Shown here: in pieces, positions 5,093 to 28,600 of the stretch
Position numbering within the stretch: position 1 is the first letter of the stretch
Layout: every line of letters starts with the position of its first letter
Origin: Octopus bimaculoides
Lineage: Eukaryota
Direction: 5' to 3'
Length of the DNA: 64,000 bases
Assembly (NCBI RefSeq): GCF_001194135.2
Contig: NC_068982.1
Span: 35,886,762-35,950,761 of the forward strand
Made by a program: the position numbers and the translations under genes
Notes under the pieces: generated by a model
Seen by the model: only the letters and a program-made list of their open reading frames with translations
Database searches by the model: none
Told to the model about the DNA's origin: nothing

Positions 5093-7428
5093 ACACTCAG
5101 TACAGTTTCTTACTACCCCCTTGCCACACATCAAGATTGGCCACTTCCTAAATGGAAGTAGTTTTCTTTCCCACTTTTCCTCTAATTCAACAGACTGTTC
5201 ATAGATCAAGATCAACAATATACATAAGCTTAAATAAACCACGATATGGTGAGGGATGTATGTATTTGTGTATGCACCCCCCACCCAACATTGATGACCA
5301 ATGGTGCGTTTACATCCACACAACTTTGCAGTTCAGTAAAAGAGACCAATAAAATAAGTACTAGGCTTACAAATAAGTTCTGGGGTTGATTTGTTCAACT
5401 AAAAAAGCAGTGCTCCAGCATGGCCACAGTTAAATGACTGAAACCAGTAAAAAGAGAAGTAGACAACACATTGGTTCACCAATAGTTCAAGGTACAAAAA
5501 AAAAAAAAAAAAAAAAAACGCATCTAAACTTGATTTATTTCATTTGTGTTCACATTTCGATGGTACCCTACTGTCAAAGCATTTTCCCGCCATTATGCAC
5601 CAGTCTGGCTATTTATAAAAAGGCACCCAAAAGAATTGACTTAATTTGGCCTCCTCAGTGATGGAACCCAAATGTTCTGAACTAAACCAAAAAAATGTTT
5701 TCGTATACAAATCACTACATAAAACATTTACTGGCTAACGAGAAAGCTAGTCATGTTAGAATTAATTATGCATCCTTGAAACAGCTTTAGATTAAAATAC
5801 AGTCCAAAAATTTGCCAAAGTTAAGTTTAGTAAAACTATTCAAATCTTGATTCTAAATGTTATCAAAATTTACCTTAGAAAGTTCGCCTAAGACTTTCAA
5901 ATTAACCACTGATAATTCAGTTAATGCAGATGTTTTTGCATAGTTGTGAAATCAATAACTTTACACTGTTCTCTTATAACAGTGTAAAGTTATAAGTTTT
6001 TTCTTAGTTTCCTGTCAAAACTAGGTAGTATTCAATATGTGGTTTCACTATTACCTTTTCCATGTGGATAAAGACTAAAATTTCTAAAGAAAAGGATCAA
6101 ACCAGTTACATCTCATCAGTGGTTACGACAAAGGTGTTCTTGCAGGGAACAAACCTTTACAATGCTCAACAGTATTATTTGCAGCATCCTGCTCTTCACT
6201 AATATTTCAACTGTGTATGCTTGCTAATAAAACATTACAGCATCCACTAGCATTTAATACTGAGCAAATGGGGGGGAAGTGGCTACGCAGTTGCTCAATC
6301 AACAAGAATAGAAGCATAATGTCTCCCAAATCACTTAAAAAGAACACATTAGATAAGGTTATCCTAAAGATACAAACGAAAAGAAATAATCACAGTTGAA
6401 ACACTTTTAACATAGATCCTTGCCCAGAGCACTTAAGTCAATTCAATTACTGATATGATAAAAAAAATATATATTTAGCACCATTAACCGATTAATCTCT
6501 ATAAACAATTAAAGATTAGAAGTAAATAGCCACAGGTAATTTTAAATCAAATTTATTGAACTTTACTGATCAAATACTATGGCAGGAATAGCCATCACAA
6601 ATTAATCTGAAATACATTTACAAAAACAGACGGTTTGTAAGAACCCCCTCACCCTTATCAAAAAGAGGGTTGAAATTTTTTTTTTAATTACACAATACTT
6701 TAATGTCATTGATATAAAGTAAATATTTTGATCTTCATTGTGAAACCTGTAGTCATCGTCGTTATAAATGGGAAAATATACAGCAATTTCATATATAAGT
6801 AACCATCAAATCTTATCTGTTTGGTTAATTAAAAAAATTCTGAGGTTTGTGATCCAATTGCAACAAGAAATATCTCCTGTATTAAATTCCTTTATTTGTA
6901 GCAATAACTACACTATTAAATGACAATGCTATTTTAGTAATCAAGCCAGCACTGATTATAAAAGCTATGTGAAATTGTATGAATATTTAAACCAACACTT
7001 AAGTAGATCAGATAAAACAAAATGCAAACACTTAAAATATCGACTTGTATTTTCTGATGGAATAAAATAGATTAAAACTTGGCAATTTAATCATAATATT
7101 ATTGAATATATTTCAACAATCTATACAAAAGAAAATTTAAAGACAAAAAAATAGAAATTACATCATTTGATGTCAACTTAAAAAGCATGAAAGAAAAAAA
7201 TGATTCCAGAAAAGAATTAATCAAATACTAATGCTATGAACTTTGGAATAACTTTCATTGTTGATGGGTTTTGAAATTCAACTACTAATAACAAAAGAGA
7301 AAAATGTAGTTTCATATGTATGAGGTGGAGTAGTAAGAAAAAAAAAAAAGACGAAAATAACTGAGGTTTATATATGTGAAACAAGTTTTTGTTTTGTTTT
7401 GTTTTGTTTTTCCCTGCTCATTTATAGT

Positions 7429-10400
7429 TCAGGAATTCTTGTATCCTCGAACCATAGCCAGAACAGAAATATTCCCGTTATGCCATATGACGGAGCATTC
7501 ACCTAAAATAAAATATATTTAGTGAATTAATAAATTTGTTACATCACTAGAACTAGAAGTAAATCAGACGATAAAATTTTATTAGTGTTTGAAATTCGAT
7601 TTTATTAACATTGATTTATAATGAATTCTATCTTTCTATAAAATTTGTTTAGAGAAACATTGGAAAATTCACGAATGAAACAAAAATAAAGGGGAACAAC
7701 TTTGATGGGCTTACTGGAAACTATCGACCCACATTTAAAAAATATTTTATTTAACCCTTTCCCTACCAACCCACATGAAACTGCTTAACGTGTTTAAATT
7801 TTAGAGTGAAATTATTTGAAACATCTAATTTTAACAAACATTTAAACTTTTCATATTCTTTATTCTTCTCAATAGCTTGTCTTTCGCGAATTAACTTTTG
7901 GTGTTAGGGTCACTGAAGATAAAGGCAATGCTAACATAAAATATAGATTTCTAACGTTAGCACAAATTTGAAAGGTGAGTAAAGTCGATAAAAACAACAC
8001 TCTGCTTGACATCATTTTATCGACAAGAATGTCGAGTAAAGTTGACCTCGGACCCAAAAGTAACTAAATACCAAAACACGCAGTGGCGTACGGACCGGAT
8101 AGAACGTCTACTTTATATACGTGTGCTTCTTGTAATCAGATATATGTTATGTTTAAGGAAGCCAATTTGGTTACTGTCCAAACCCGCGCTACACCACGTT
8201 AAATCCACGACTAAGTATTTTGATCGACGTTCTGACGGGTTCTGCCAATCCACTATCAAAATTATAGAATATTAACATCAAGCATCAGAAAGAATCAGTG
8301 TTCTAGTACATAATATAAAGAATAAAAATACCTCTTGACGCAGGATCTCCAGAAAACGTGGTTGCAACATATTGGTTAGGACTCCTTTGAGAAATGGTAC
8401 ACACACCTGCAATATAAAAAGGAATATCATGCGTAATAATTACATTGCTTTTGTCAGTTCTGATCTTTTACTGGTTCTCACCACTGATGTTTGCTTCGTA
8501 TTTTGGCAAGAATTCTTGTAAAATTAATCTAAAGTGATAAGATCTCGGCGAACCGAGTTACGAACTCGCTTCAATTTCGATGGAAGCTAAATCAGCTTAT
8601 GCTATTGATATCTTTGAGAATAGCAAGGACAAATACATTCCATCTCCAATAAATAAGTGACCCTGAGTAAAGAAACCAGATATGCTTCAGTTTTTCTGAG
8701 TGGCGAATAAAATATTTTGCAATGATTAGCTAAAATCCATAGTTTAAATCTCGCTGAGATTGACAGAATTTTATTTTCCAGTATTCTTGAAATAAAGCTT
8801 CAATCAAATACTAGTCAATGTAATTAACTATACTCCTCCCTTTAAATTTCCCCAGTTGTTCCAGTGTTGGAAATCAGTGAGTTCTCGAAAAAGGTTTTCA
8901 ATTTCAATCTCATATTTCGATAAAAGAAAATAATTAGGTCGTCTATCTCGATTTACAGATACCTGTTTAAAACGTAAACACCTGCTCAAAAGCACACGCA
9001 AGTTCAGATAAAAAATATAATTCTGTAAGATGTTTTCTATTTGACCAACATCAAAGTGCTATCTGATTTATAAAAGAAAAACCAGAAACATTGGTATCAA
9101 TGAATTAACTACAACTGGAAATTGAAATAGACTTCCATATCACATTCAAACCATCGATTCAGCTTACACATAACTGTCAAAGAGTCCCGGTATTTAATAC
9201 GATTTAAACAACTGTACAAAATTCTATCTCTTCTGTATAATATATTTAATAAGATAGTTATAAAGGAGGGGTGAGGCTTTCAATTTGATATTAAAATTCT
9301 TTGCCCGTTAATTCCAGCCAATTTAGTTAATAAAAATGTTCGTCAAACAATGGTTTTAGAAGTTATATAATTATGAATAATACCGGCAGAAAATATCAGA
9401 ATGGCTACAGTTTCTAAATATCAAAGGCAAAAGGAAGTTTTATAATCTTTACATAAATAAAAACGAAGTTTATTTAGCATCAAACTAGATCGACTGACCT
9501 TGATATCGGAGATTTCGCCAAAGTCGGAGATGCTGAAAAGACAAATTAATTATCCTGTCAGACCATTTCTGGGCAAGTTCTTTAATATAATCGCTGTGTG
9601 GGCCAATTACTTGCTCTATTGTCTGGTAAAAGAGAACATCGACAAGTTACAATTACTAAAACGGATTGTGAAATTCAAACGAGGATTAGTATCGAAGAGT
9701 TATTCTGTTAATAGACTACAAGAATAATCAAAAGTGACTGGATGGTTGATGTATTGACCGACTGGCTGACTGAAGGGTAGTCTTGCTTTATCCGAATCAT
9801 TTACGTAATGTCAAAGACGAGAACGACAAACAAAATACCTTTACGATCCCGCTGGATCAGATTAGGTACTAAATTCGATTTAAACTATACTTCTATTGAA
9901 TTTCTAATATAATGTGAGAAGCTTAAAAGAAAGAGTATAAAAAGCAGGCCGTAATTCTGTTTTTAAAAAAAGAGTCCTGGGACACCAATGTAGAAATTCT
10001 TTTGTTTAGATATGCTGCGATATGAAGTAAGAGTTAAATAATAACCTTCATTGCGTCTGTCCTGAACGAAAGCTCCTGAAATCCGTGATTTAATGGTAAA
10101 TTACGTTTTTCAACCAGAGTTGTTCAGAAGCGACATACCGCTGACAGAATATTCCGTCATTGTTGACGTCTCTCCTTATTAGGTGCCGTCATTTTCGCAA
10201 TTACTACGTTTGGAGTTACCTTAATTTTTGGACGAACGTGCGGGTTTATTTTCTTCACTAATTTTTGTTGTTACCATACATTTTTGTAAATTAACGGTCT
10301 AAGAAATATATATAACAGTTGAAATATATTAATATGTCCTTTTTACTATAGGAACAAAGCCTGGAATTTTGGGGGAGGGGGACTGTCGATTACGTCGACT

Positions 10401-13400
10401 CCAGTGCTCGACTGGTACTAATTTTATCAACTCCACAAGGATGAAAAGCAAAGACGACCTCGGCGGAATTTGAACTCAGAACGTAAAGACGGACGAAATG
10501 CCAGTTCGCCGCCTTACATTTATATGTAACATCAACGGCATTGATAATAAAACAAAAATAAACTCGGTATTCCGACAAAGTGAAACAAATACGTAATTTT
10601 GCAATGATTCAGTGAAAAGGAATATATTTTACACAAGAAATACAAAACAGTACTCTGATATAATCCAAGTTCCAGCTAGTCACATCGAATGATAAAGGAA
10701 CATAATATTAAGATAAACAATTATTTGGTATTTCACTCGACAGGTAAATCTGGAGTTCGCTTCCTAGGATTTTATAGAGCATACAGAATATATATTCAAG
10801 ACATTTCTTTTAATGGTGTTTTGTGTGTATATGTGCATGTATATATCACCGTTTTTATTCATAAATCATATTTGAGGAATTTGAAATTAATTTAGACTTC
10901 GTCCCTTATAAAGAGGTATTGGCAATCCATTTCATACTCACATCGATAATAATTTCAATTGCTTCCGCTGCATCGAATTCCACATTTGATCTCACATCCA
11001 CCTAAAAGTGACAAAGTATATATTACGATTAGGCATACAAAAAAAAAAAATCGAATGAAAATTCCTATTTGTGACGTTCCTGCTTCTCCCAATAATATAA
11101 ATTAGCTGCATTAGCGAATTTGCTTCTACTGGAAGGTAATATTGGTTGAAGATGTTGATTAACTAAATGTATAGTCCTTGATGTACAAAGTTATGTTTCT
11201 GAATAAATTTCTAAGACCAGAAAAAAAAAAACACGGCGATTAGTGCAGGAAACATGTCTTCTTTTTTGAGATAAAAAGTGGGGGCAGATATTAAGTGCAG
11301 TTTTATGAGATTATATGTATTAGACAAGAAAAGGCTAAGCGCAGGTATTAAAATATAACCAAGACAGGATGCAAAAGATGAATTGAGTAGGATGCTATAG
11401 AATTGTGTTAAGAGTTAAACTATTTCATTAATCTTTCCTTTTTTTTTTTTTCTTCAACTCATTAAGCAATTAAACTTTAACGGAGAAAACTCACTTTTAC
11501 TGGGTAATTAGTTGGAGAAGGACTAATATAACGTTCTTGTGCACGCTGCTTTTCTATTAAACGTGCTTGGTGTTTTAATTTATCGGCAATATAATAGTAC
11601 GATTCCATAAATGTAGGCTGTACGTAAAAATGTGAATAGGACATTATTCTTCCATTCACTGAAGTTAACTGTTTATAGTCGACTCCCCATCATTACTTTT
11701 ATATGTATACAAGTTCACCCTAACATTCATTTCATTTTAGCGCACTAGCAACATTTCTTCTGACTCTTTATGTTCTGAGTTCAAATTTGACCGAGGTCGA
11801 TATAGCCTTTCATAATAGATAAAATAGATATGAGTTTAACACTGGCACCTAAATTGCTGGCCTTGGGCCAAAATTATTATTATTATTTTCTTATTTTTCG
11901 CTTGATTTCCATTTTATTTCATCTTCTGACCAGGTCTCAACGAGAGACTTAAGGCACGTATATATTAGATGGAGAGACACTTCCTGAGAAGATGATCGGT
12001 TGATGTCAGCACAATTTTTATTATGTGAGATTGGTACACATGGAATTTTAAAAAATCAAATTGCTCGTGATATCTGGTTTAAATATCAGGTAGTTTTTTT
12101 AAAAAAATGAAATTGTAAAGTTTAGGACGCCGGAAGTTCTTGGAGTATCATATCCGCCACCTTTCCTTTTTCATTTCACCTAAGCGTGTAATAGAAGCGA
12201 TTCCCCATTGCAAGGAAAGTTTTCCTCAAGCAGTGAAGACCCTCTTTGGTGAAAAATGTGGATCAAAAGTATCTACTGCTGATATAGCAGCAATAGATAC
12301 TTTTGCGTAAACAGTAATATGATCCAACGAGATGTATTTATGTGGTTCCTTACTTCATGGAACTTTAAAAATAATCTCTAATATTAATAGTAGAGATGTA
12401 CGAATAAAGAGTAAATAGTTGAGACATATTTATTGAACTGCATCAGATAAATAGTGATTGATAAAGATAGTAAAGATGATTATCCTATTGTTTTCTAATT
12501 AGACTATGTTAAAGTTGTGAAATGAGTTCTGGTCAAGAAGTGGTTCGAGTTATGACCATTTTTGCTTTTTTTATATTGTATATTTTGGTTTCGTTTTTCA
12601 GGCATAGTGTTTCAAGAACTATTGAATATATCCTTCGTTTATTAAAACAATAGTTGTGATTTGAAGGAGATATAGTTGCTATTTCTAGCAAGTCAGTCGT
12701 CCACGTAGAGGCTCCCTGGTTAGCTCATATGAAAGGTGATTTAGTAGAGGTGATTTGTTTCACATTAAGTAAGTTTGGTTAAAAAATTATTAAAGGCTTA
12801 GGTAATATTGGTTTCAAATTTTGGCACAAGGTCAGCAACTTCGTGGGAGGAGTAAGGCAATTGCATCGACCCCAGTGCTCAACTGGTACTTATTTTATCA
12901 ACCCCTGAAAGGATGAAAGATGAAGTCGACCTCGGCAGAATTTGAACTCAGAATATAAAGACGGAAGAAATGCTGCTAAGCATTTTGCTTGGTGTACCAA
13001 CGATTCTGCCTGCTTGCCGCCCTAGGCTTTGGTAATATTTATTCCATACAACACCTCAAAGTTGGTGTAAGGATTGCTGTATTTTATACGTTACATTTTA
13101 TAAGTTACATTTTCTTTAAAAGAAAAATGTCTCAAAAATAATCACTCTGGGTCCCTTATTCGAGATTGTGCCTCCCATAAGCTTTCTGAACACACACTGC
13201 TGAAATTAGTGTGTGCCAATATGCCCGTTCGTCTTTTATGCTATCAAATACGGAATATCAAATTCAGTATTTGACTGTCAGAACATAAAGGATCGTAACT
13301 AAATACCAAAGTATTTTGTTCAACGCTCTTACGATTTTGCCCATTCACCGCTCTTAAGACTTTAGCGAAAATCTGATTGTCTGTGTTAGCAACAAATAGT

Positions 13401-14729
13401 CAGTGGGGAAATTTGAGTAAACATTTGGTAAGTTCGGTTTTGGTGAAGGGTGAAGGATAAGACATTTGGGATTCATGCCCTTCATTTGAGTGAAGAAGAA
13501 AGGAAAATGCTGTTGTCGCTTGGGTTTCAGGCAAGGCAAACATTGATTTCGTGCCAATGGAAAACTAACCAGTGGTGAATGTCTTGTCCCTTTCCCGCGC
13601 ACCTTATCATGTACAAACTGCACTAGGAACCATTGTATGTTTGCTAACAGTATTATTTATGCTGCACAGTTTGTTGTATCTTCAATTAGTGTTGGAATAA
13701 ATGTGGCCATCAATTTTAACCTGAGTTTCCGTATGTCTTGGTGCTCTTAATCATGACATGTTTGGAACCAGATCATTATAACATTACCTGGGCCATAGCC
13801 ACACGCATCCCACTAAACATATATTATATGTCTCCTGGTGCGTTTAAAATACAAAGAGAGAATCCGTCAGAATCGACATTGCTTTACAAATCTCTAGGAT
13901 TAAAGTACTTGTAATAAACTGGTATCCAATCAATTAACTATATCCTTTCAGTGTTAGTACTGGACTTAATAAAAAATACTTGTAAATAACTATTAGTATA
14001 CTTATTTTATAACTAGTTCAAGCATTTCACATGGTTATATCATGTGGCCCAATCTGATGAGTTACATAACTGTCCTTTCCGTGTAGAGAAGTTTCTTCCT
14101 CTAATTGACGACATATCAATGGCATCTCCAACAGGATTTGGAGAATTAGCAGTGTGTGATCCCGATTTGACTAAAGCCTGGTTAGGAAGCTGTTCAATGA
14201 ATGCGAGAAGCTCAAGAACTCTATAAATTTCTTCGTCTATCAAGCAAGGGCTGAGAATATTAAAAGTGTCTCTTTGGTGGTGTATCCTAAAGTACTAGTG
14301 GTAGTGAACTTTACAAATATAAAATAGATCATAACGTCGAAAATGAAATCAAAGATGTTGCTTATCGATGAAATGACACGCTTTCTGGATCAGAGGAAAA
14401 TGTCATCGGAACTAATACGAAGCCAGCAATTACGGGGAAGGAGATAAGTCGATTACATTAACTCCAGTGTTCAACTGGTACTTATTTTATCGAACCCAAA
14501 AGGATGAAAGGCAAAGTTGACCCCGGCAGAATTTGAACTTAGAACGTAAAAACATTTCATCCGGCGTGCTAACAATTCTGCCAGTTCGCCGCCTTAATAT
14601 AATGGAATATTGAAAATAGGTCACACGTTTTTGATAAATTAATTAGTTTGGGACTAAGGAACAATCTGCTGAAGATTACCTTTGTACAAATACAACTAAT
14701 TGATGGCCTGTTAAATTCTGCCCGTCTCT
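7429..14729 (-). CDS. Unidentified multi-exon protein-coding gene, 5' end uncertain; join of 14729-14680, 14286-14066, 11658-11495, 11001-10942, 10298-10275, 9532-9499, 8406-8332, 7502-7429
   Basis: Eight exons (50, 221, 164, 60, 24, 34, 75, 74 nt = 702 nt), each with an AG acceptor and GT donor (gtaatc, gtaact, gtgagt, gtgagt, gtaaca, gtcagt, gtattt). Phases match at all seven junctions (2,1,0,0,0,1,1) and give one open frame ending in TGA at 7431-7429. Protein: RDGQNLTGHQLVVFVQRIHHQRDTFNILSPCLIDEEIYRVLELLAFIEQLPNQALVKSGSHTANSPNPVGDAIDMSSIRGRNFSTRKGQLLNGRIMSYSHFYVQPTFMESYYYIADKLKHQARLIEKQRAQERYISPSPTNYPVKVDVRSNVEFDAAEAIEIIIDTVNLQKCMHLRLWRNLRYQGVCTISQRSPNQYVATTFSGDPASRGECSVIWHNGNISVLAMVRGYKNS. 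An alternative in-phase acceptor exists at 14250. Confidence 0.8.
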
Positions 14730-14739
14730 CTAAAATATT

Positions 14740-15049
14740 TGTTTCAAATTTTGGCACAAGGCCAGCAATTTCGGGGTAAGGAATAAGTTGATTACATCGA
14801 CCCAGTATTTAACTGGTGCTAATTTTATTCTTTTCTACTCTAGGCACAAGGCCTGAAATTTTGGGGGAAGGGGCCAGTCGATTAGATCGACCCCTATATG
14901 CAACTGGAACTTATTTTATTGACACCGAAAGCTTGAAAGGCAAAGTCGGCCTCGGCGAAATTTAAACTCAGAATGTAAAGACGGACGAAATACTGCAAAG
15001 CATTTTGCCCGGCATGCTAACAACTCTGCCAGTTTGCCGCCTTACATCG
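14740..15049 (-). mobile_element. SINE family B doublet (ggcggcaaactggcagagttgttagcatgccggg...gagtttaaatttcgccgaggccgactttgcctttc...) with a 12-bp TSD
   Basis: TSD ctctaaaatatt at 14728-14739 and 15050-15061. Family B copies also lie at about 3640-3960, 4855-5092, 10352-10515, 11740-11870, 12810-13025, 14425-14596, 24945-25148, 47000-47420 and 53517-53735. Confidence 0.85.
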
Positions 15050-15171
15050 CTCTAAAATATTATGACACAAGTATTTCAAGAAATGTTACTATCAAGTTGT
15101 CTTAGACATATTCAATAATTTCAAATAAATTACTTTACTTTGCAAACTCTTATTAATGATAATAATAGCAT

Positions 15172-15580
15172 TCTCTTTTATTCTCTCTTACTTGTTTCAG
15201 TCATTTGACTGCGGTCATGCTGGAGCACCGCCTTTAATCGAGCAAATTGACCCCAGGACTTATTCTTTGGAAGCCTAGTACTTATTTTATCGGTGTCTTT
15301 TGCCGAACCGCTAAATTACGGGAACGTAAACACACCACCATCGGTTGTCAAGCGATGCTGGAGGAACAAACACAGACACACAAACATACACACACACACA
15401 TATATATACATATATGCGACGGGCTTCCTTCAGTTTCCGTCTACCAAATCCACTCACAAGGCTTTGATTGACCCGAGGCTATAGTAGAAGACACTTGCCC
15501 AAGGTGCCACGCAGTGGGAATAAACCCGGAACCATGTGGTTGGTAAGCAAGCTACTTACCACACAGCCACTTCTGCGCCT
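15172..15580 (-). mobile_element. tRNA-derived SINE, family A (gtggctgtgtggtaag...ggttccgggtt...gcaccttgggcaagtgtcttctactatagc...ccagcatgaccgcagtcaaatgactgaaacaagtaa), well preserved
   Basis: Pol III A/B-box-like head and an internal (CA)/(TA) microsatellite. Other copies or fragments lie at about 5200-5460, 22420-22540, 34310-34415, 35905-36255, 36620-36780, 39130-39230, 39335-39505, 48050-48240, 49975-50696, 60240-60410 and 63271-63683. Confidence 0.85.
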
Positions 15581-15639
15581 ATATGTTAAAATAATTGTCA
15601 TACATGTAGACAATAGTCGTCAAGACAAAAGAACCACAG

Positions 15640-16152
15640 GTTAGCTTTGTGGTTATACCCATAGTATGGGAAAGTGTCCTGCTATTAGGAAGATAGGCAA
15701 TATCTATGAGAAGAACCTTTTACAGTCTGTCTGCATGTCTCCTAGGAAGATATTTGAGAAAGCTCACAAAGTTGATGTTGGTACAGGTAGTGACCAAGTC
15801 TTGAGCAATGTCTTCAACATTGAGAGCAGATACAATGTTGAAGTACAGATGCATGTAAACAATGTCAGTGACATGACTATCATCCCAAGAAATGTTTGAA
15901 TAAAACCAGGGTCTCCCAATTTGGAATCTTGCAAGGCTAGCCTCAAGCAGTTTGATAGTTCGATAATCAAACTGTCGGAGAAGTTTGAAACCATATTGGA
16001 GACAGAAATTAGAAAAGATATAGTTTCTGAACTTGTTATAAAAATTATTGAAATGGGTGCAATGCCAGGTCTAATTAAAGCAAGTGTTTAAAAAGTTATA
16101 AAACGGAAAGAAAATGAGAAAAATGACGCTAAACTTGCATATTATGAATCTA
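15640..16152 (+). mobile_element. Degenerate Gypsy-like gag (zinc knuckle)/protease remnant
   Basis: One frame with two internal stops: LCGYTHSMGKCPAIRKIGNIY (decayed CCHC knuckle), VQMHVNNVSDMTIIPRNV* (decayed DTG protease site), SLKQFDSSIIKL, ...KLAYYES. Confidence 0.6.
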
Positions 16153-17213
16153 GCTTGGCTTCTTGCTTCATGCTCATGTTTGATGTGGGTGGGATCATTC
16201 TAAGTTAGTGGTTTTAGAAGCGTCATTATGCGTAGAGCCGACCAAGTTCACCAGTGCTCTCTATCGTTGGTGCCAGTTCCTCTGCATACTCTAAGGTGAC
16301 GTCGAGCCTCTGGAGATTTTCCCCAATCACGACAGCCATCTTGTGTGGGGCCTGTCATGAGGCCTCTTCCAGACTGCAGCTGCTACGTCGAATGAGAGTA
16401 AAGCCCTGGTAGGATGAGCTAGCAGGAGACGGAGGACATGTCCGTACCAGCGCATGTGACGGCTAGCTGTGAGGTAGGAGGCTGCGAGCTAATGCATGTG
16501 CTCACGCAGTTCTTTGCTGGAAACGTGATGGTACCATCTGATGTCCTCGATGGTTCTCAGGGCTCTGCTATCGAAGCCGTCGATCTTCTTTGCCAGGGTC
16601 TTCGAGGGGGGGGGGACATTTCTCCTCCATAGAAGAGAATAGAGAGGGCTGATGCGTTGTAGATGCAGAGTTTTGTATTCCGGGAGATAGAGCAGTGGTG
16701 CCAAAGGGGCTTCCATAGGGAGTACATGACGCCAGCGGCCAGACTATATCTGCAGTTAATCTCCGGGGTCAGGTTTTTATTGTTGGTGACTGTGGAGCCC
16801 AGGTAGATGAAGGAGTTGACAAACTCCACGATGTCGAGGCCTGTATGGAGAAGGTCCGAATCATCTCCGACATGCAGAAGCTTAGTCTTCGCCCAACTCA
16901 CCTGAAGACCAAACTTTGCGGATTCTTCTCATCATTGAAAGAGCTCAGGAGTTCCGCAAAAATCGCCACTTCTGCATTGCCTTCGTCGACCTCAAGGCAG
17001 CTTTTGACACGGCCAACTACGCATCCCTCTGGAAAATTCTCAAGCTCGTCAGTACACCTCCCAAGATCTCCGCACTGTTCCAACGGCTCTATAGCGGTGC
17101 CGAGAGCTGCGTGCGGGTGAACGGGAAGGACTTTGACTGATTCCCCACCAACAGCGGGGTTACACAGAACTGAGTGCCGCCCAGACCTCTTCGACTGGAT
17201 CATCGGTTATCTG
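16153..17213. mobile_element. RTE-clade LINE with 5' inversion: 3' RT half on the minus strand (16920-16153), upstream RT piece on the plus strand (16916-17213)
   Basis: Minus strand: AKFGLQVSWAKTKL..VEFVNSFIYLGS..TKLCIYNASALSILFYG..KIDGFDSRALRTI..W and a short-repeat tail. Plus strand: LRILLIIERAQEFRKNRHFCIAFVDLKAAFDT..SCVRVNG..SGV..DLFDWIIGYL. Confidence 0.9.
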
Positions 17214-17290
17214 ATATTTGAAGAGGCCGAGAAGCAGTCTGATGCATTACGTTATATTTTTCGGGAAGGAGTGGGGAAAACTGAAGGACC

Positions 17291-17623
17291 TGTAGGAAAT
17301 TGGTTATACACCATTAGGTGTATACCCACTTCCGTACATTAAATTCGGAATAAACAACGCAACGCAGAACTCTGAACTATCAACACAACAATATTTATTT
17401 ATGGAGGAAAATAGGCATGGTTGCTGAGACGTCGGAACGTTGTTGTGAGCTGTCCCCAGAGTTGGAATGTTGGAGAGACAGCTTAACACGTCCATGCTCA
17501 TGTGAGATAGCTCTGGGCTGGACGTCCGACCTCTCCGTCGGCCGGCGAGAAAAGAGAAAGAATCAGGGCGCCAAACTTGGATATTGATGACTACGCATGC
17601 GCACGAGACAGGGCGTTACTACA
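17291..17623 (-). mobile_element. Solo LTR (333 bp)
   Basis: Begins tgtag and ends ctaca (TG...CA, 5-bp inverted ends), with a 4-bp TSD gacc at 17287-17290 and 17624-17627. AATAAA on the minus strand suggests the orientation. Confidence 0.85.
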
Positions 17624-19066
17624 GACCGCTCCGGATGACAAACTCTAGCAACATCTTTGATTCCCTATCTGAAGTTCGTATAGTACACTAACTCACAACG
17701 GTTTATTGCATGGGGTACAGTGTGATAGTCTGTAGATGTTGCCTTTCTCACACTGTCCTATTCAGCAAACGTAGGCAAAGTGAACTCAATTAAAACTGTG
17801 GTTATTTCTCTTCAGTTCTTCTTTCAGAGTAGTGCGTATCCTTGCACAGTATTTGAAGCTACGATGTTATTGATATATTTATCTATCTTGACAGTGTTCT
17901 CTGCATTGTATTTTTGCACTATTGTACCTGTAACTTGGTGTTTGAGGATGATAAAACAATTTCTAGTGATAAGGGCTATGTGGGCTAGGACATTGTTGAG
18001 GCAATGACTTGTGTTCCTCGCATGTCCTGAATTCAGTTCATTCATAGAACTCAATATTTGATATTACTGTATTTAAAAAGTCTGCCAGGTGTCGTGATTT
18101 TGTTGTCATTAATCAGTTAAATCGTTTCCGCTCCTACAACCATCTGATAACTTGTACTACATTTACCCTTCAAACAAACCTCATTGAAAAGCTATCACTT
18201 ACAGAAGTTGAACACTTAGTAGAAAGGAGGAAGTGCTTGATTTCTTCTTTCAGAATTATATTTCCATTAAACTACTGCTTTGATTTCCACTACTGCTATA
18301 GATAACAGTAATTTATTTCGTTCTCCTGTCATCTTAATTTACTCCGTCCCTCCTCTATGCACGATTTAATTACATCAACGTAACCAGTAGTATTTTACTG
18401 ACATGCGACACATAAAAAAATATATCCAATAAAAGCAAAAATACAATAGAATAATATTATCAATAGTGCCGTCTGACCATCCAAGTAGATGTCGGTAACA
18501 CAATCGTGTTGTAGAATAATAAAACAGCTACATCAAGAAATATGAGACAATCAACATAAAGCATTACTGACATTTTCTCTATAACCGCAGCTGAAAACGT
18601 CCAAAACTATTCCTTGTCTGCGACAGGATAATCATCCAACACAGTGGCGATCGATAACCAAACCTAGGGGAAGCGTTTGTTAGCTGATATCATCCGTAGA
18701 CGGGTTAATTTCTAAAAAATTAAACCCATTGGCTACCAACTGAACTATTTATTATTGCTGCCGCTAGCTAACGCGCCAATCATTGTAAAGTTGATCTGTC
18801 GTAAATCGACGGCGACCTGTATTTTATGTTCTGTTTTCTTGCTGTATATGATTCTTATACAAAAAGATTCCATTTCAACTATATAGGTCATTGAATTATC
18901 TTCAGTTCCACTTATTTTTTCCTTTTCAAATATGGAGTTTAATACATAATGTCTTTTCTTTCACAATTAAGAATTGAAACGATGGGTGTGCAGTCCAAAG
19001 GTTCGTATCGTGTCGTAGTTACTCTATCGTGTCCATAGGTAAGAAAATTCACACTAGTCTTCTGTA

Positions 19067-19625
19067 CAGTAACACCACACTTTACGAGGACCCGGGTTTA
19101 CGAGTTTATTTTTTTAGCTCACTTTTGTGTGGAGAACTGAAATTTTTCAAGCACCACATCCAAATTTTGACCGAAGTGCAAAAGTTTCTACTTCTACAAC
19201 AAATGCTTCTGCGTGTTACTGAGAAATTTATAGAGAGCGAAAAAAGGCTTCTACACAAACAATTATAGGCTTATTTTTAAAAAAGAAATCTACAAGTCTG
19301 TCTACACGGGCTTGTGAATCGGCAATCGCGTCTACAAGTGATGGTATGCGAGAGAAAGTGATTCAGAAAACAGTTATAATAATATTTTTTATCATAAATG
19401 ATCTTCACGTTCTTTTTACCTTGCATAAAATATTCTTTACATTCTACTGTTGTTTTATTGCCCTTTATTTACGAGTATTATAAATTTTATAGGTAAAATA
19501 TTTTTCTGGAAACGAATTATGATTTAGAACATTGCTATTATGGGAAATTATTGCTCTGTTTTACGAGTTTTCGCTTTACAAGCGGTCTCCGGGAACAAAT
19601 TAACTCGTATATCGAGGCATTACTG
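19067..19625. mobile_element. pogo/Tigger-like non-autonomous DNA element (MITE)
   Basis: TA-flanked ends cagtaacacc...tacgag and ctcgta...ggcattactg, an imperfect TIR. Confidence 0.6.
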
Positions 19626-20379
19626 TATCTCGTAGTAAATGGTTACAAGGAACCGCTAGCAATTGTTCTGTCATCTAGAAAATAACAGCCAAATATCCTT
19701 CAAATCTTAGAAAAGGACATGTTATATAAAATAGTTCTACATACTCGTAAAAAGACAGGATGGTCACGATTTGAATATATTTAATCGTGCGTTTTCTCAG
19801 TCAGAGACAAACTGGAGTTAAAAATAGCCCTGTATAATCGATAAGTATTTCTACACGCTTACCGTACTTTAATCAAATCCTCCTGTAAGATTGTTGGGTT
19901 CTGCACGGTTGAATTAACCTAAACATAGTACATATAAATGAATTCTTCAATTGGTATTTCTACAGCCACATATGTAGTAAAATTAATGACTTTTTTTTTT
20001 AATCGCTTCAGTGATGAAGTTTTTACAAGAATTCAAAACTTACTCTGTATCGTAGCTCTACTACTCACAATTTGTGGTTTCCCTTCTTATATTAAAAACT
20101 GAAAATTATATGAGGTCAAATAAGAAAACAATAAGTCTCTTGGAAAAAGCCTCCCTATCAGTTGCAACATTCGTAAACTTCAATCTAACTTAAATCCAAA
20201 CTCACTACCCACTACTAATGCATCTTATTCCTCTCTGAGAGTATATCTCTTATCTTCTATTTCTAACCCATCTCTACTGCTCAGGTTACGACTTCACACT
20301 GAAAAGCAGTGTATCCCACTTAATTAAAATCAACTCTCCCTACCACTCACCCCTCTTATCTGGGTATCAGCAACAAAAA

Positions 20380-23367: not shown

Positions 23368-23424
<57 letters not shown>

Positions 23425-23501: not shown

Positions 23502-23542
<41 letters not shown>

Positions 23543-24577: not shown

Positions 24578-25672
24578 TTGCCAGCATAGAAGTTAAAAGA
24601 TGATGATGTTGAGAATAATGAGAATGATGATGACAGCATCCTGAATTAGCAGAGATTTCTCATTTTCCTATGATAGACAATATGTCTTTTTCACATGAAC
24701 TGCATATAGTTTTAGCTATCTGTTAATTAGCTTCCTGGAACAGTTAATAGTAACTTTTAATTCAGGCACAAGGCTAGCATTTGTTTTATCAACTTCAGGA
24801 TGAAAGGCAATGTTGACCATAGCAAGATTTGAACTCAGAATGTAAAGAACCAACAGAAATACTGCAAAGTATTTTGTTTAACATTGTAATTGATTCTGCC
24901 AATCCACTACCTTCAGGAGCAGTTAATAATCCTTTCTAATTTTGCCACAGAGTCAGCAATTTGAGGAAGATGGGACAGTTGATTACATTGCCCCCCAACC
25001 CCTGCTCAACTGGTACTTATTTTATTAACCCAGAAAGAAAGACAAAATCAACCACTGAGCATGTGAACTCAGGATGTAAAGCTGGAAGAAATTCCACTAA
25101 GCATTTTGTCAGAGATGCTAATGATTCTGCCAGCTTACCACCTTATTAGCAGTTTATGAAATTAAACATATTACAAATTATCTAATTACCATTTTAGTCA
25201 TGTTATTTCTTTTCAGATTCAGCATTACTGAATTTTTACTGTTGATTTAAGCACCTTAAACAGAAATAAAACTGTGGAAGCGGATTTTTTTCTATCATTT
25301 TTTTTTTATACAAAAAGCATTGAATGCAATAAATAGTTATTAAATATTTTTCTTTTTTTTTTATTTGATATTCTTTCTCTTTCCCCAACTTATCAACTTC
25401 CCAAGAAATTCACACACCAAGTTAAAATGTGTTGATTTTTGAGATGGCTAACATCTCTCAGTTGTAATGCCTTTTTACCCTACAAGCTTCATATGCAATT
25501 GGGAAAGCATGAAGAGAATGATAAGAGTTTATATGCCAGCAGTGTGGCACAACCAAATTCAAAGACCAACCCAGCCTTCAGCAACACAACAATGCTAATA
25601 ACAACAGTTAAAATGTTACATTTCTGATAAACTGATGTGTCAAATTGGCCAAAAGTGTCATAGTTAGCAAAT

Positions 25673-28600
25673 TTATTCATAACTTGCAATAAGGACCATC
25701 ATATAAACCCCCAATATTAGAGCAACTATTTCTTTAATAGACTGGCGGAAGCTGGATTCTATAAGAAGTTCTGGAATAACAGAGACAGTGGCAATATAAA
25801 TAAATCCTCCAGCAGTGAAAGGGAGCACCCAAGCTGTAGCTGTAATTCCTGTGCTTCCTGCCACTAAACTGCATATTGTTCCCATGATGGCACCAAGTGC
25901 TGTTGATAGTTGAAGCAGCATTGCCTGTGGAGTACAAATAAAAGAAAAGGCATATATTAATTAACAGACTAAACATTTGTATATTTCGGAAATAAATATA
26001 AAATAAATTATTACTAAGAGATTTAACCATTAAAATTATATTCCTTTCTTTATCCTTTTCCATGAGGGTTAGATGAATCTGAAAGTCTGAACAATTACAG
26101 GAAATCTATAACTGGAATTCCTTCTTAACACAAACCATTAAAAACTTAAATGAAATAGATCAAAGTACATTTTGGAAGCATACTACACACAAGCAGGGTT
26201 TGAAACCTCCACAAACTATTTTGCTGCTTGAAGAAACAATGCTTTGCCTTGGGCTTTCAATTCATAGAGGCATCATCATGAAATACAGCATGTTTGGTAC
26301 ATTTTTAGACCTGGCAGAGCCCATCCCTCTACAGGCTTGACTAGAACATGACTGGTAATTTATTTCTCAATTTTGAAAAATATGAAAAGCTAAGTTGAGC
26401 TCAGAAGGTTTTGTTTAAACTCAGAGTGTAGTGAGCCAGAACAAATATCATAAAATAATCTGTCTGACGCTCAAATACCTCTGCCAACTGACTGCCTTGA
26501 CAGGAAGGGTAAGAGTAACTAAATGCTCCAATTTATCATAATATCAATCATATAAATTAGGAACCTGCTCCAAATATTAGAAGTAATTTACAAATTGTTT
26601 CTTTCCTTATTATTCCCCACAATCACTAAAAAGTCTAACAGTGTATGCCACTTTTCAAGGTATTAAGCAGTTGAAAGCCCCTGCCCTCACCCACTCTGGA
26701 GAACAGAGAGAGAGATTACCAATATTCCAAACATTTTCCTCTGAATCCAGTACTGTGAATTATCAAAAGCTCAACAAATACATAATAGTTGAATGTATTA
26801 TCAAACTACTTCACTTAGTTTCATTCACCACCATTATATTTCTTCAGTGGATTATTCACAGAAACAGGACTTTACATCTGTTTTTATGCAATGCGCCCTT
26901 AGCATAATTAAAATTGGAAAATGAGTTAAGACATGACCACAATCTGTTCCAACCCATATGGTCTCTGTAACTACATGTCTGGTCTTCTACAATTAACTAA
27001 ATACATTAGCTAATTACCAGAACACTATATCAGTGTCCAAAAATCACTATTTTTTCCATTTAATCTAGACAAACACAAGATAGCTGCAAAAATGACTGCT
27101 TCACATGGCAAAACTCTATGCAATGATTATCAATGGGATCAAACTATCTGACAATAACACTATTCCCTTTAGTTTTTGCCTTACTGTTGTCATTTTCAGT
27201 AGTTTTGATCATTACTGAAGAGATTAGACAGCAAATTAAACACAACATATTCATTCTTACACTTCATTTAACACTATTAACAACTGCAAAACAGAAACTA
27301 TAGTGTCTGATCTGATATGAAACTATTAAAGAATCTATGTTTACAGGTTTTGTACTTGTAGAATTCACTCTGAAACAAAAAATTAATCATTGATAATATC
27401 AAGATTTTGTTGCAATTTTATTTATTTAAGAATGTTTTTCATTTCATAAATAAGAAATTTACTACACCATCAAATATTTATATAATTTTGTACATTTTGT
27501 ATATTTTTTTAAACTGAAGCTAATTTAAGAGAACAAAAATTACTGGGAAATTATTTTGAAAATTAGCTTACCCTTTTCTTAGTGCAACCAGATTTCACAA
27601 GAATAGCAAAATCTCCAATTTCATGAGGAATTTCATGCAGGAAGATAGTGATGGTTGTTACAATTCCAACATTACGGCCAACAAGGAAAGAAGCACCAAT
27701 GGCCAACCCATCAGTGAAATTATGAGCAAAATCGGCAGCAAGATTCAAGTAACCAGATACAGCAATTTCATTTTGGGTTTGCAAGTCTTTTTCTTTAGAT
27801 GATGCTGAAGTAAACAATAAACCAGTTTTTATTCACTTTATACAGAGGTAATAAATAATAATTCAATTGTTATTGTTTGTCTATATCACCTAAATGAGTT
27901 ACATTCATTCTACATAGAAGTAATGACTAATAACCAACAAAATTACTATTTAATTACCTGCCACATAAAATGATTGGGGGGGGGGGCTAATGTAGTTTCG
28001 CACCTCTCCTTGAAAAATGCATTTAAAAAAAAAATTTTTTCAGATTCCTATGTTTCAGATGTTGGAGATTATGAATATGCAAAAGAAAAAAATTTTTTTG
28101 AAAAATTTGTTTTTTTTCCTATGTTTTAGATGATGGAGATTCCGAATATGCAAGAAACCACATTTTCAAAATTTTAAATTAAATAAGCATATGAAAGTCT
28201 TCCTGGGGCTAAAAACAACAGTAACACCGTCTTCTTTCGGACCGCAACATTTAGTTGACAAATATATTTTATGAATAAACAGACAGGGATAAATAGACAG
28301 ATAAATAAATAAATGGATGAAAAAGTTCAAAATTTAAAATTGGAGAAGTGGGTGAAATTTGAACCCCTTATTAAACTTTATAACATTAATTATTAAACAT
28401 TAATGCATGTTTCTCATAAAATGGTGTATATTTAATTTACATTAAATTATTATTTATAATTATTTAAGGCAAACACAAGTAAAATGCAAATTCTTTTCAC
28501 TTTAATGTTTTTGTCTATATTTAATTTCAATTTGATTATGTTCAAAAAGATTGCTCTGAAAATGATCTCTCTCCACAAATCCAGCTATCTTTTGTATTCT

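What the first reader, a model, noticed from the sequence alone, without database searches (positions are those of the whole stretch)
7429..14729. Hidden 8-exon gene encoding a protein I cannot assign to any family
No ORF in the track reveals this gene. Eight short segments with canonical splice sites join with matching phases at all seven introns into a 233-aa open frame with ordinary protein-like composition. It has a helical-looking N-half, a low-complexity linker and a beta-rich-looking C-terminal ~90 aa (VDVRSNVEF..LRLWRNLRYQGVC..ECSVIWHNG..VRGY). It also has three N-glycosylation sequons (NLT, NFS, NIS). Seven consecutive phase matches are unlikely by chance, although I chose the exons by eye. 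It may be a lineage-restricted or poorly annotated gene. Unlike its housekeeping neighbours it sits in CpG-retaining DNA, suggesting tissue-specific expression (inference).
Basis: partly seen in the sequence, partly recalled or inferred. Interest (0 to 1): 0.85.

Follow-up and report, generated by a model that had tools for sequence, protein, structure and literature searches.

The report
Divergent octopus Tctex-type dynein light chain
The "hidden gene" is real, but it is a five-exon, 160-residue gene already in the Octopus bimaculoides annotation as an uncharacterised protein, and it is a very divergent member of the well-known Tctex-1 dynein light-chain family found so far only in cephalopods, not a protein without a family.

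Summary
A spliced minus-strand gene is present. The supported model has 5 coding exons (11644-11495, 11001-10942, 9622-9499, 8406-8332, 7502-7429) and 160 aa, not 8 exons and 233 aa. It is 100% identical to RefSeq XP_014791183.2 (LOC106884354, "uncharacterized protein", Octopus bimaculoides). Orthologues exist in O. vulgaris and Argonauta hians with identical intron positions and phases, and in one cephalopod-like transcript whose 5' leader carries in-frame stops. Purifying selection is clear (dN/dS 0.215 between the Octopus species; 0.135 in the C-terminal domain). At least 29 alternative GT-AG chains meet the same constraints, shuffled DNA does as well, and no homologue exists. The DNA that holds them is absent from the syntenic O. 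vulgaris locus. Residues ~58-160 are a Tctex-1 domain: Pfam is marginal, hhalign gives 98.2%, and the top 36 Foldseek hits are all Tctex-type light chains. All residues invariant in the reference set are kept. A 55-residue N-terminal extension has no detectable relatives outside this group. The CpG-retention observation is confirmed (o/e about 1.0 against 0.0-0.4 in the flanks). Most likely function is a dimeric Tctex-type light chain or adaptor, which is inferred. Interest is low to moderate.

The parts
11495..11644 (-). Coding exon 1 (150 nt, ATG at 11644-11642; aa 1-50, MSYSHFYVQPTFMESYYY...NYPVK); donor GTAAAA|gtgagt
Evidence: Exact solution reproducing XP_014791183.2 with GT-AG sites. The start and MSYSHF are conserved in O. 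vulgaris, in a further octopus (P0004) and in Argonauta (MAYSHF).
10942..11001 (-). Coding exon 2 (60 nt, aa 51-70, VDVRSNVEFDAAEAIEIIID); ttttag|GTGGAT ... ATCGAT|gtgagt; phase 0 on both sides
   Evidence: orthologous exon of 57 nt in Argonauta and 60 nt in O. vulgaris
9499..9622 (-). Coding exon 3 (124 nt, aa 71-112; TIEQVIGPHSDYIKELAQKWSDRIINLSFQHLRLWRNLRYQ-G); accag|ACAATA ... ATCAAG|gtcagt; ends in phase 1
   Evidence: 124 nt in all three genomes; aligns with Argonauta DNA at 76%
8332..8406 (-). Coding exon 4 (75 nt, aa 112-137; G-VCTISQRSPNQYVATTFSGDPASR-G); ttgcag|GTGTGT ... CAAGAG|gtattt
   Evidence: 75 nt in all three genomes
7429..7502 (-). Coding exon 5 (74 nt including the TGA stop at 7431-7429; aa 137-160, G-ECSVIWHNGNISVLAMVRGYKNS*)
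11697..11703 (-). TATAAAA motif 59 nt upstream of the ATG, inside a ~60-nt block that is almost invariant between the two Octopus species; candidate core promoter (inferred)
   Evidence: TATAAAA at -59 (O. bimaculoides) and -52 (O. vulgaris); TATAAAT at -53 and -33 (Argonauta)
7001..20000 (.). CpG-retaining domain (CpG o/e 0.57-1.32 per kb) that holds the gene, with sharp edges against CpG-depleted flanks (0.0-0.4)

Best explanation
Window 7429-11644 (minus strand) is the coding part of Octopus bimaculoides LOC106884354. It is a five-exon gene for a 160-residue cytosolic protein. The protein has a fast-evolving 55-residue N-terminal extension: one predicted helix at about 12-38, then a disordered linker. 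That is followed by a strongly conserved Tctex-1 domain (about 58-160) with an alpha1-alpha2-beta1-beta4 layout.

Shown here: the gene structure, its conservation and purifying selection in octopods, and membership of the Tctex-1 superfamily by sequence profile and predicted fold.

Inferred from what is established for the family (PMC10886578, PMC10987677, PMC8754002): the domain forms a strand-swapped dimer, either with itself or with the canonical Tctex1-type chain. The exposed edge strands of that dimer capture short disordered peptides, typically from a dynein intermediate chain. This helps hold two intermediate chains together at the base of a dynein light-chain tower. The lineage-specific N-terminal helix would add an extra contact or recruit a partner.

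Also inferred: the TATA-type promoter next to the ATG and the CpG-retaining, presumably unmethylated, setting suggest tissue-restricted expression. Several extended Tctex paralogues in other animals are axonemal or associated with sperm.
For: Gene model:
- 100% identity of five GT-AG-bounded exons to XP_014791183.2.
- The annotated CDS span of 4,216 bp equals window 11644-7429, and window 1-21644 is identical to CM046602.1.
- O. vulgaris has identical exon lengths, and Argonauta has the same four intron positions and phases (exon 1 of 186 nt, then 57/124/75/71 nt).
- A contiguous 159-codon CDS lies on a 1,022-nt transcript-like contig with in-frame stops in its leader.

Selection:
- dN/dS is 0.215 overall and 0.135 in the Tctex part for O. 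bimaculoides against O. vulgaris. CDS identity is 95.4% against about 87.6% for the surrounding DNA.
- Against Argonauta, pN is 0.105 and pS 0.67 in the domain.
- Only the five exons align collinearly with Argonauta DNA.

Family:
- Pfam PF03645 covers profile positions 4-94 of 95, at E 3.3e-4 for the octopus protein and 8.2e-6 for the best orthologue. PF03645 is precomputed for the Argonauta protein.
- The orthologue profile against the PDB finds DYNLT1 at E 3e-6.
- Among 1.84 billion representatives it finds 20 proteins. All nine domain-level hits scanned against Pfam score 92-193 bits on Tctex-1; the tenth protein scanned, P0004, is a 54-aa exon-1 fragment with no Pfam match.
- hhalign against 12 such proteins gives probability 98.2% and E 2.9e-14.
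- The 10 columns invariant across all 16 aligned sequences (4 cephalopod proteins plus 12 Tctex-1 references) correspond to octopus F59, Y82, W90, L102, Y110, C114, Q118, C139, W143 and N145.
- The AF2 model has pLDDT 85-94 over most of 60-160 (71-72 at 121-140) with H61-76, H84-105 and four strands.
- The top 36 Foldseek PDB hits are all Tctex-type light chains, with TM-score by target of 0.65-0.80 for the best.

Promoter and CpG.
Against: - The octopus sequence alone scores 21.4 bits, below Pfam's gathering threshold of 22.8.
- The AF2 model depends on an alignment in which 12 of 16 rows are canonical Tctex-1 proteins, so the fold match is partly circular. With the three orthologues alone the pLDDT was 40.5.
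- Some near-canonical motifs are changed (WEN to WHN; C-[FY]-W-D to F-S-G-D). Identity to canonical chains is only 20-30%, so partner specificity may have changed.
- No expression data, no protein interaction and no dimer model were available here.
- Whether dynein is the partner is inference from the family. Family members such as yeast Tda2 work without dynein (PMC10886578).
Confidence: 0.75

Rival explanations
1. One reading: an 8-exon gene from 14729 to 7429 encoding a 233-aa, possibly glycosylated protein of no known family.
For: Open, GT-AG-bounded segments can be chained in phase from 14729 into 11622. An 84-codon open stretch exists at 14294-14043.
Against:
- There is no ATG at 14729.
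- The 84-codon stretch has no Pfam match and no homologue in 5.8 billion clusters, including the annotated Octopus proteomes.
- There is no tblastn or blastn conservation in Argonauta or in the related transcript.
- Window 13357-17212, which holds these segments, has no counterpart in the syntenic O. vulgaris locus, yet that species encodes a 94%-identical 160-aa protein.
- O. vulgaris has an in-frame stop two codons before the ATG.
- The residues the model skips (MSYSHFYVQ) are conserved as coding sequence, and the internal acceptor is absent in Argonauta.
- The related transcript has stops in its leader.
- The protein does belong to a family.
Confidence: 0.03
2. A Tctex-fold protein that has left dynein. 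It would act as a dimerisation hub or adaptor for a lineage-specific partner, for example in actin regulation or receptor-tail binding, as yeast Tda2 does and as Tctex-1 does in its dynein-independent roles.
For: - Divergence from canonical chains is extreme: only 20 hits at E<=1e-3 among 1.84 billion representatives, and 20-30% identity.
- Near-canonical motifs are altered.
- The N-terminal extension is conserved only within the group.
- Tda2 is among the structural matches.
- The literature documents dynein-independent Tctex functions (PMC10886578).
Against: The family-invariant core residues are all retained. The best sequence and structure matches are dynein-bound DYNLT1 chains. Most animal Tctex paralogues studied so far are dynein subunits (PMC8754002).
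Confidence: 0.2
3. The five-exon CDS is right, but the O. bimaculoides mRNA also carries non-coding 5' exons somewhere in 11.7-20 kb, possibly overlapping the reader's segments, as species-specific 5' UTR.
For: Only CDS spans were available here, not UTR annotation. The CpG-retaining domain extends about 8 kb upstream of the ATG.
Against: A conserved TATA motif lies 52-59 nt upstream of the ATG in a nearly invariant block. The related transcript has a 98-nt leader. The upstream block is missing in O. vulgaris.
Confidence: 0.1
4. A decaying or non-functional duplicate (pseudogene) of a dynein light chain gene.
For: Strong divergence from canonical family members.
Against: The frame is intact and the splice sites are identical in three genomes. 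dN/dS is 0.07-0.22. A transcript exists in a related species.
Confidence: 0.02

Closest known systems
DYNLT1/DYNLT3 (Tctex-1 / Tctex1-type dynein light chains; Pfam PF03645)
   Same: These are the best sequence and structure matches: PDB DYNLT1 at E 3e-6, and Foldseek 8rgi_A, 8pr0_G and 5wi4 at E about 1e-6. The match spans the full Tctex domain with the same alpha2-beta4 order. All residues invariant in the reference set are retained.
   Different: Identity is only 20-30%. The protein carries a 55-residue N-terminal extension, whereas canonical chains are about 111-116 aa. WEN becomes WHN and the C-[FY]-W-D motif becomes F-S-G-D. There is a one-residue insertion before Y82 and a one-residue deletion after L102. 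The octopus sequence scores below Pfam's threshold.
N-terminally extended Tctex paralogues: DYNLT2B/TCTEX1D2, DYNLT2/TCTE3, DYNLT4/TCTEX1D4, DYNLT5/TCTEX1D1
   Same: Same architecture, an N-terminal extension followed by a C-terminal Tctex domain. DYNLT2B heterodimerises with DYNLT1 by strand swap and binds the intermediate chain on an edge strand (PMC10987677). DYNLT4 and DYNLT5 are likewise poorly characterised (PMC8754002).
   Different: No sequence-level hit to DYNLT2B or Tctex2-type PDB chains even at E<=10. The structural match to DYNLT2B (8rgi_B) is much weaker than to DYNLT1, at E 8e-3 and 12% identity. There is no RVxF PP1-docking motif of the kind that defines TCTEX1D4 function (PMC3654263). 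The extension has no detectable relatives outside the cephalopod group.
Yeast Tda2 (Tctex-fold protein acting in actin assembly, independent of dynein)
   Same: Tctex fold (Foldseek hits 5vky_A and 5vky_B). It is a precedent for a divergent family member working outside dynein (PMC10886578).
   Different: It is a weaker match (E about 1e-2, 11-12% identity) than the dynein-bound chains. No evidence here for or against a link to actin.

Membership tests
Tctex-1 family (Pfam PF03645; Tctex-type dynein light chains) | Significant match to the family profile over the whole ~95-residue domain | tested here: met
   PF03645 positions 4-94 of 95. The octopus protein gives E 3.3e-4 and 21.4 bits, just under the gathering score of 22.8. 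All three orthologues match, the best at E 8.2e-6. PF03645 is precomputed for the Argonauta orthologue. hhalign of the orthologue profile against 12 genuine members gives 98.2% probability and E 2.9e-14.
Tctex-1 family (Pfam PF03645; Tctex-type dynein light chains) | Reciprocity: distant relatives found by the query profile are themselves family members | tested here: met
   Beyond its own cluster, the profile finds 19 proteins among 1.84 billion. All nine domain-level hits scanned score 92-193 bits on PF03645; the tenth protein scanned, P0004, is a 54-aa exon-1 fragment with no Pfam match. All significant PDB hits are Tctex1 chains.
Tctex-1 family (Pfam PF03645; Tctex-type dynein light chains) | Fold: two helices followed by a four-stranded sheet | tested here: met
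   The AF2 model has H61-76, H84-105, E109-118, E128-130, E138-145 and E148-157, with pLDDT 85-94 over most of the domain (71-72 at 121-140). The top 36 Foldseek hits are all Tctex-type chains. Caveat: the alignment used was dominated by family members, and the shallow alignment gave pLDDT 40.
Tctex-1 family (Pfam PF03645; Tctex-type dynein light chains) | Retention of family-invariant core residues | tested here: met
   Ten columns are invariant across all 16 aligned sequences, which include the 4 cephalopod proteins: F59, Y82, W90, L102, Y110, C114, Q118, C139, W143, N145. G77, A126, D132, G137 and V141 are nearly invariant and are also kept.
Tctex-1 family (Pfam PF03645; Tctex-type dynein light chains) | Strand-swapped dimer that binds a dynein intermediate-chain peptide on its edge strand; presence in a dynein complex | not testable with these tools
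   No multimer prediction or interaction data were available. The property is taken from the literature on family members (PMC10886578, PMC10987677).
DYNLT1/DYNLT3 subfamily (orthologue of canonical Tctex1) | Protein of about 111-116 aa made of the Tctex domain alone, with high identity to canonical Tctex1 | tested here: not met
   160 aa with a 55-residue extension, and 20-30% identity to canonical chains. I did not test whether the octopus genome also carries a canonical Tctex1 gene.
DYNLT2 / DYNLT2B (Tctex2-type) subfamily | Closer sequence relationship to Tctex2-type than to Tctex1-type chains | tested here: not met
   No Tctex2-type PDB chain appears at E<=10. 8rgi_B (DYNLT2B) gives E 8e-3 and 12% identity, against 8rgi_A (DYNLT1) at E 7e-7 and 22% identity. 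No phylogeny was made.
DYNLT4 / TCTEX1D4 | RVxF-type PP1-docking motif in the N-terminal part | tested here: not met
   No [RK]-x(0,1)-[VI]-{P}-[FW] motif in any of the four orthologues. The motif's role is taken from PMC3654263.
   Maximum Kyte-Doolittle hydropathy over 15 residues in the first 40 aa is 0.18 in the octopus protein and at most 0.83 in the orthologues. There is no strongly hydrophobic 19-residue segment. This is a crude test; no dedicated predictor was available.

The most novel reading that the evidence does not exclude
The gene founds a cephalopod-restricted clade of Tctex-type proteins whose domain has diverged far from every other animal DYNLT paralogue. It has gained a new N-terminal helical module and serves a lineage-specific, tissue-restricted role, for example in sperm flagella, sensory cilia or a dynein-independent adaptor complex, instead of standing in for a canonical light chain.
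Probability: 0.3. Interest if true: 0.4.

Novelty: new member of a known kind. Interest (0 to 1): 0.2.

Why it matters
The practical result is a better annotation. Proteins labelled "uncharacterized" or "hypothetical" in three octopod genomes can be named Tctex-type dynein light chain-like, and the 160-aa start at M1 is supported over the older 148-aa model. Biologically it adds a very divergent branch, seen so far only in cephalopods, to a small family whose extended members (DYNLT4, DYNLT5) are still poorly understood. This could interest people working on cephalopod cilia, sperm or neuronal transport. It opens no long-standing question. As a method lesson, phase-compatible GT-AG chains picked by eye in AT-rich intergenic DNA arise freely by chance.

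Tried and rejected
- A structure prediction from the three orthologues alone gave pLDDT 40.5 and was unusable. I replaced it with a 16-row alignment.
- The 84-codon open stretch at 14294-14043 and the 100-codon stretch at 13656-13357 have no Pfam match. The former has no homologue at all. Both were rejected as coding.
- A second homologue search with the orthologue alignment found no further members. The taxonomic range therefore rests on O. bimaculoides, O. vulgaris, Argonauta hians, one exon-1 fragment from another octopus-like sample (P0004) and one transcript of unknown species (SRR8281686).
- Paper searches for that run accession and for the gene identifiers found nothing. 'Tctex' plus 'Octopus' gave nothing relevant.
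- I looked for tandem paralogues in the window: tblastn of the protein gives only chance-level hits elsewhere.
- dS against Argonauta and the unknown species is saturated, so only pN/pS and the Octopus-Octopus comparison are quantitative.
- I considered a PP1-docking mechanism like DYNLT4 and a secreted glycoprotein, and rejected both.
Full report
**1. What is in the sequence**

The region is AT-rich animal DNA (GC about 0.34). Inspection of the flanks shows clean AG...GT boundaries around the C-terminal segments.

A provisional translation found a 160-aa protein that is 100% identical: XP_014791183.2 / UniProt A0A0L8I3B9, "uncharacterized protein LOC106884354 [Octopus bimaculoides]". Window 1-21644 is 100% identical to O. 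bimaculoides chromosome record CM046602.1. The annotated CDS span of 4,216 bp equals window 11644-7429.

I solved for GT-AG boundaries that reproduce the protein, which gives five coding exons:
- 11644-11495 (150 nt)
- 11001-10942 (60 nt)
- 9622-9499 (124 nt)
- 8406-8332 (75 nt)
- 7502-7429 (74 nt, including the stop)

**2. Is the five-exon gene real and constrained?**

- O. vulgaris (CAI9718574.1, 94% identical, 10 substitutions) has identical exon lengths and splice sites.
- Argonauta hians (LOC115224530, 69% identical) has the same four intron positions and phases, with exons of 186, 57, 124, 75 and 71 nt.
- A 1,022-nt contig from run SRR8281686 carries an uninterrupted 159-codon orthologous CDS (64% identical). 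It has in-frame stops in its 98-nt leader, so it behaves as a spliced transcript with a protein of at most 164 aa.
- Between the two Octopus species dN/dS is 0.215 (0.135 for residues 58-160, 0.274 for residues 1-57). The CDS is 95.4% identical, against about 87.6% for the surrounding locus.
- Against Argonauta, synonymous sites are saturated (pS 0.67-0.79) while pN in the domain is 0.105.
- At the DNA level only the five exons align collinearly between octopus and Argonauta.

**3. The three upstream exons are not supported**

The finding gives no coordinates for them. A start at 14729 reads RDGQNLTGHQ... (the NLT sequon) directly after an AG, without an ATG. An exon around 14250-14066 holds the NFS sequon. 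To reach 233 aa the chain must enter the true first exon at an internal CAG at 11622, skipping the real start codon.

- Under exactly these constraints 29 different chains are valid. Without the sequon condition there are 186, and 20 shuffles of the same DNA gave 0-315, with 3 above the real count. The phase-match argument therefore has no force here.
- The first segment abuts a SINE-like repeat at 14734-15047.
- The 84-codon open stretch at 14294-14043 has no Pfam match and shares too few words with anything among 5.8 billion protein clusters to yield even a candidate.
- Neither segment has a tblastn match in the Argonauta locus (10 kb upstream included) or in the related transcript, nor a blastn match.
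- Most directly, window 13357-17212 has no counterpart in the syntenic O. vulgaris locus. About 4.3 kb in O. bimaculoides (window 13357-17623) stands against about 0.9 kb in O. vulgaris (L004 7428-8346), of which about 0.84 kb is unrelated sequence. Only SINE copies and one relocated inverted segment match.
- O. vulgaris has a stop codon two codons before its ATG.
In Argonauta the CAG is CAA.
- A TATAAAA motif sits 59 nt (O. bimaculoides) and 52 nt (O. vulgaris) upstream of the ATG in an almost invariant block. Argonauta has TATAAAT at -53 and -33. This suggests, by inference, that coding exon 1 is also the first exon.

**4. What the protein is**

- Pfam gives one family, Tctex-1 (PF03645), covering profile positions 4-94 of 95. 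The octopus sequence scores E 3.3e-4 and 21.4 bits, just below the 22.8-bit threshold. All three orthologues hit, the best at E 8.2e-6.
- A profile of the orthologues finds human DYNLT1 chains in the PDB at E 3e-6, then Chlamydomonas and Drosophila Tctex1. No Tctex2-type chain appears even at E<=10.
- An exhaustive HMMER scan of 1.84 billion representatives finds only 20 proteins at E<=1e-3. These are the group's own cluster, one exon-1 fragment, and otherwise Tctex-domain proteins of the DYNLT1/3 type. All nine domain-level hits scanned against Pfam score 92-193 bits on PF03645; the exon-1 fragment P0004 has no Pfam match.
- Profile-profile comparison with 12 of them gives 98.2% probability and E 2.9e-14 over 103 columns.
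- In the joint alignment the 10 columns invariant across all 16 sequences include the octopus protein (F59, Y82, W90, L102, Y110, C114, Q118, C139, W143, N145). Some near-canonical motifs differ: WEN becomes WHN, and C-[FY]-W-D becomes F-S-G-D.
- With this alignment AlphaFold2 models most of residues 60-160 at pLDDT 85-94 (71-72 over 121-140), as two helices plus four strands. Residues 1-55 are a low-confidence helix (12-38) plus a disordered linker.
- The top 36 Foldseek matches in the PDB are all Tctex-type chains, including DYNLT1, axonemal Tctex chains, DYNLT2B and yeast Tda2. Because the alignment was mostly canonical members, and the shallow one failed, I treat the fold result as consistency, not independent proof.

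**5. Mechanism (inferred from the family)**

- Tctex-type chains form strand-swapped homo- or heterodimers. Their edge strands capture disordered segments of dynein intermediate chains, next to LC8, at the base of the light-chain tower. In dynein-2 and in axonemal dyneins the dimer is a heterodimer of Tctex1 with an N-terminally extended paralogue (PMC10886578, PMC10987677, PMC8754002).
- The octopus protein has that architecture, so the best-supported reading is a dimeric light chain or adaptor whose extension adds a lineage-specific contact.
- The family also has dynein-independent members and roles, such as Tda2 and actin regulation by Tctex-1 (PMC10886578). Given the strong divergence, this stands as the main rival.
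- There is no RVxF PP1-docking motif of the kind used by TCTEX1D4 (PMC3654263).
- There is no hydrophobic N-terminus, so the sequons (NLS at 96, NIS at 147) are unlikely to be glycosylated.

**6. The CpG observation is correct**

CpG o/e per kb is 0.57-1.32 from about 7 kb to 20 kb. It drops to 0.0-0.4 on both sides, including most of the syntenic ZIP-transporter gene upstream, whose exons lie at 25669-25937, 27559-27820 and 33194-33953.

Many invertebrates show mosaic gene-body methylation, in which broadly expressed genes are methylated and CpG-depleted (general knowledge, not tested here). On that pattern, the CpG result fits an unmethylated, tissue-restricted gene, but it is an inference.

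**7. Novelty**

The gene model is already public, and the family is old and well known. What this work adds is:
- the family assignment for proteins labelled uncharacterised, which no paper in the library mentions;
- support for the M1 start;
- the observation that close relatives are seen only in cephalopod data.

I file it as a new, highly divergent member of a known kind, with low to moderate interest.

Noticed in passing
window 10329-10501, 11746-11813, 12800-13024, 14417-14596, 14734-15047: Copies of a SINE-like dispersed repeat (core ...GGCACAAGGCC...TTTGAACTCAGAAC...). Each has up to 11 further copies in the window, and related copies occur in the O. vulgaris and Argonauta loci.
   Followed up: partly
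window 13357-17623 vs L004 7428-8346; window 15590-15172 vs L004 1478-1069: A large indel or rearrangement between O. bimaculoides and O. vulgaris just upstream of the gene. About 4.3 kb stands against about 0.9 kb, most of it unrelated sequence with a CCCTAA-like run in O. vulgaris. A 420-bp segment is found inverted and about 7 kb away in O. vulgaris at 88% identity.
   Followed up: partly
window 16557-17203 (minus strand), inside the GC-rich block 16-18 kb (GC 0.47): Two adjacent open stretches of 114 and 101 codons. The first has a weak sub-threshold match to DUF6451 (E 7.6e-4). It may be a remnant of a mobile element, and it accounts for part of the high CpG count upstream of the gene.
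   Followed up: partly
window 25669-25937, 27559-27820, 33194-33953 (minus strand): Exons of a ZIP-family (PF02535) metal transporter gene, aligning at 69-81% with the gene directly upstream of the Argonauta orthologue. Synteny is conserved, but the intergenic distance is about 14 kb in octopus against 3.7 kb in Argonauta.
   Followed up: partly
window 31001-35000: A second CpG-retaining patch (o/e 0.64-0.93) inside an otherwise CpG-depleted stretch. It overlaps the large conserved ZIP exon at 33194-33953 and may be that gene's 5' end or promoter.
   Followed up: no
window 11608-11606 (codon 13 of the gene): The earlier RefSeq version (XP_014791183.1, 148 aa) started at Met13. That codon is Leu in O. 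vulgaris, whereas Met1 is conserved in three octopods, which supports the current 160-aa model.
   Followed up: yes
L005 / L006 (Logan contigs from SRR11869391 and SRR11869384), 144-308: A 54-codon call (P0004) from another octopus-like sample. It is exon 1 of the orthologue read through the donor into the intron (…PAK|VSFSN), and the contig aligns to window 11780-10567 at 73%. The species is unknown.
   Followed up: partly
window 23373-23414 and 23506-23540: Two perfect (TA)n microsatellites of 21 and 17.5 units, in the intergenic region between the ZIP gene and the Tctex-like gene.
   Followed up: no
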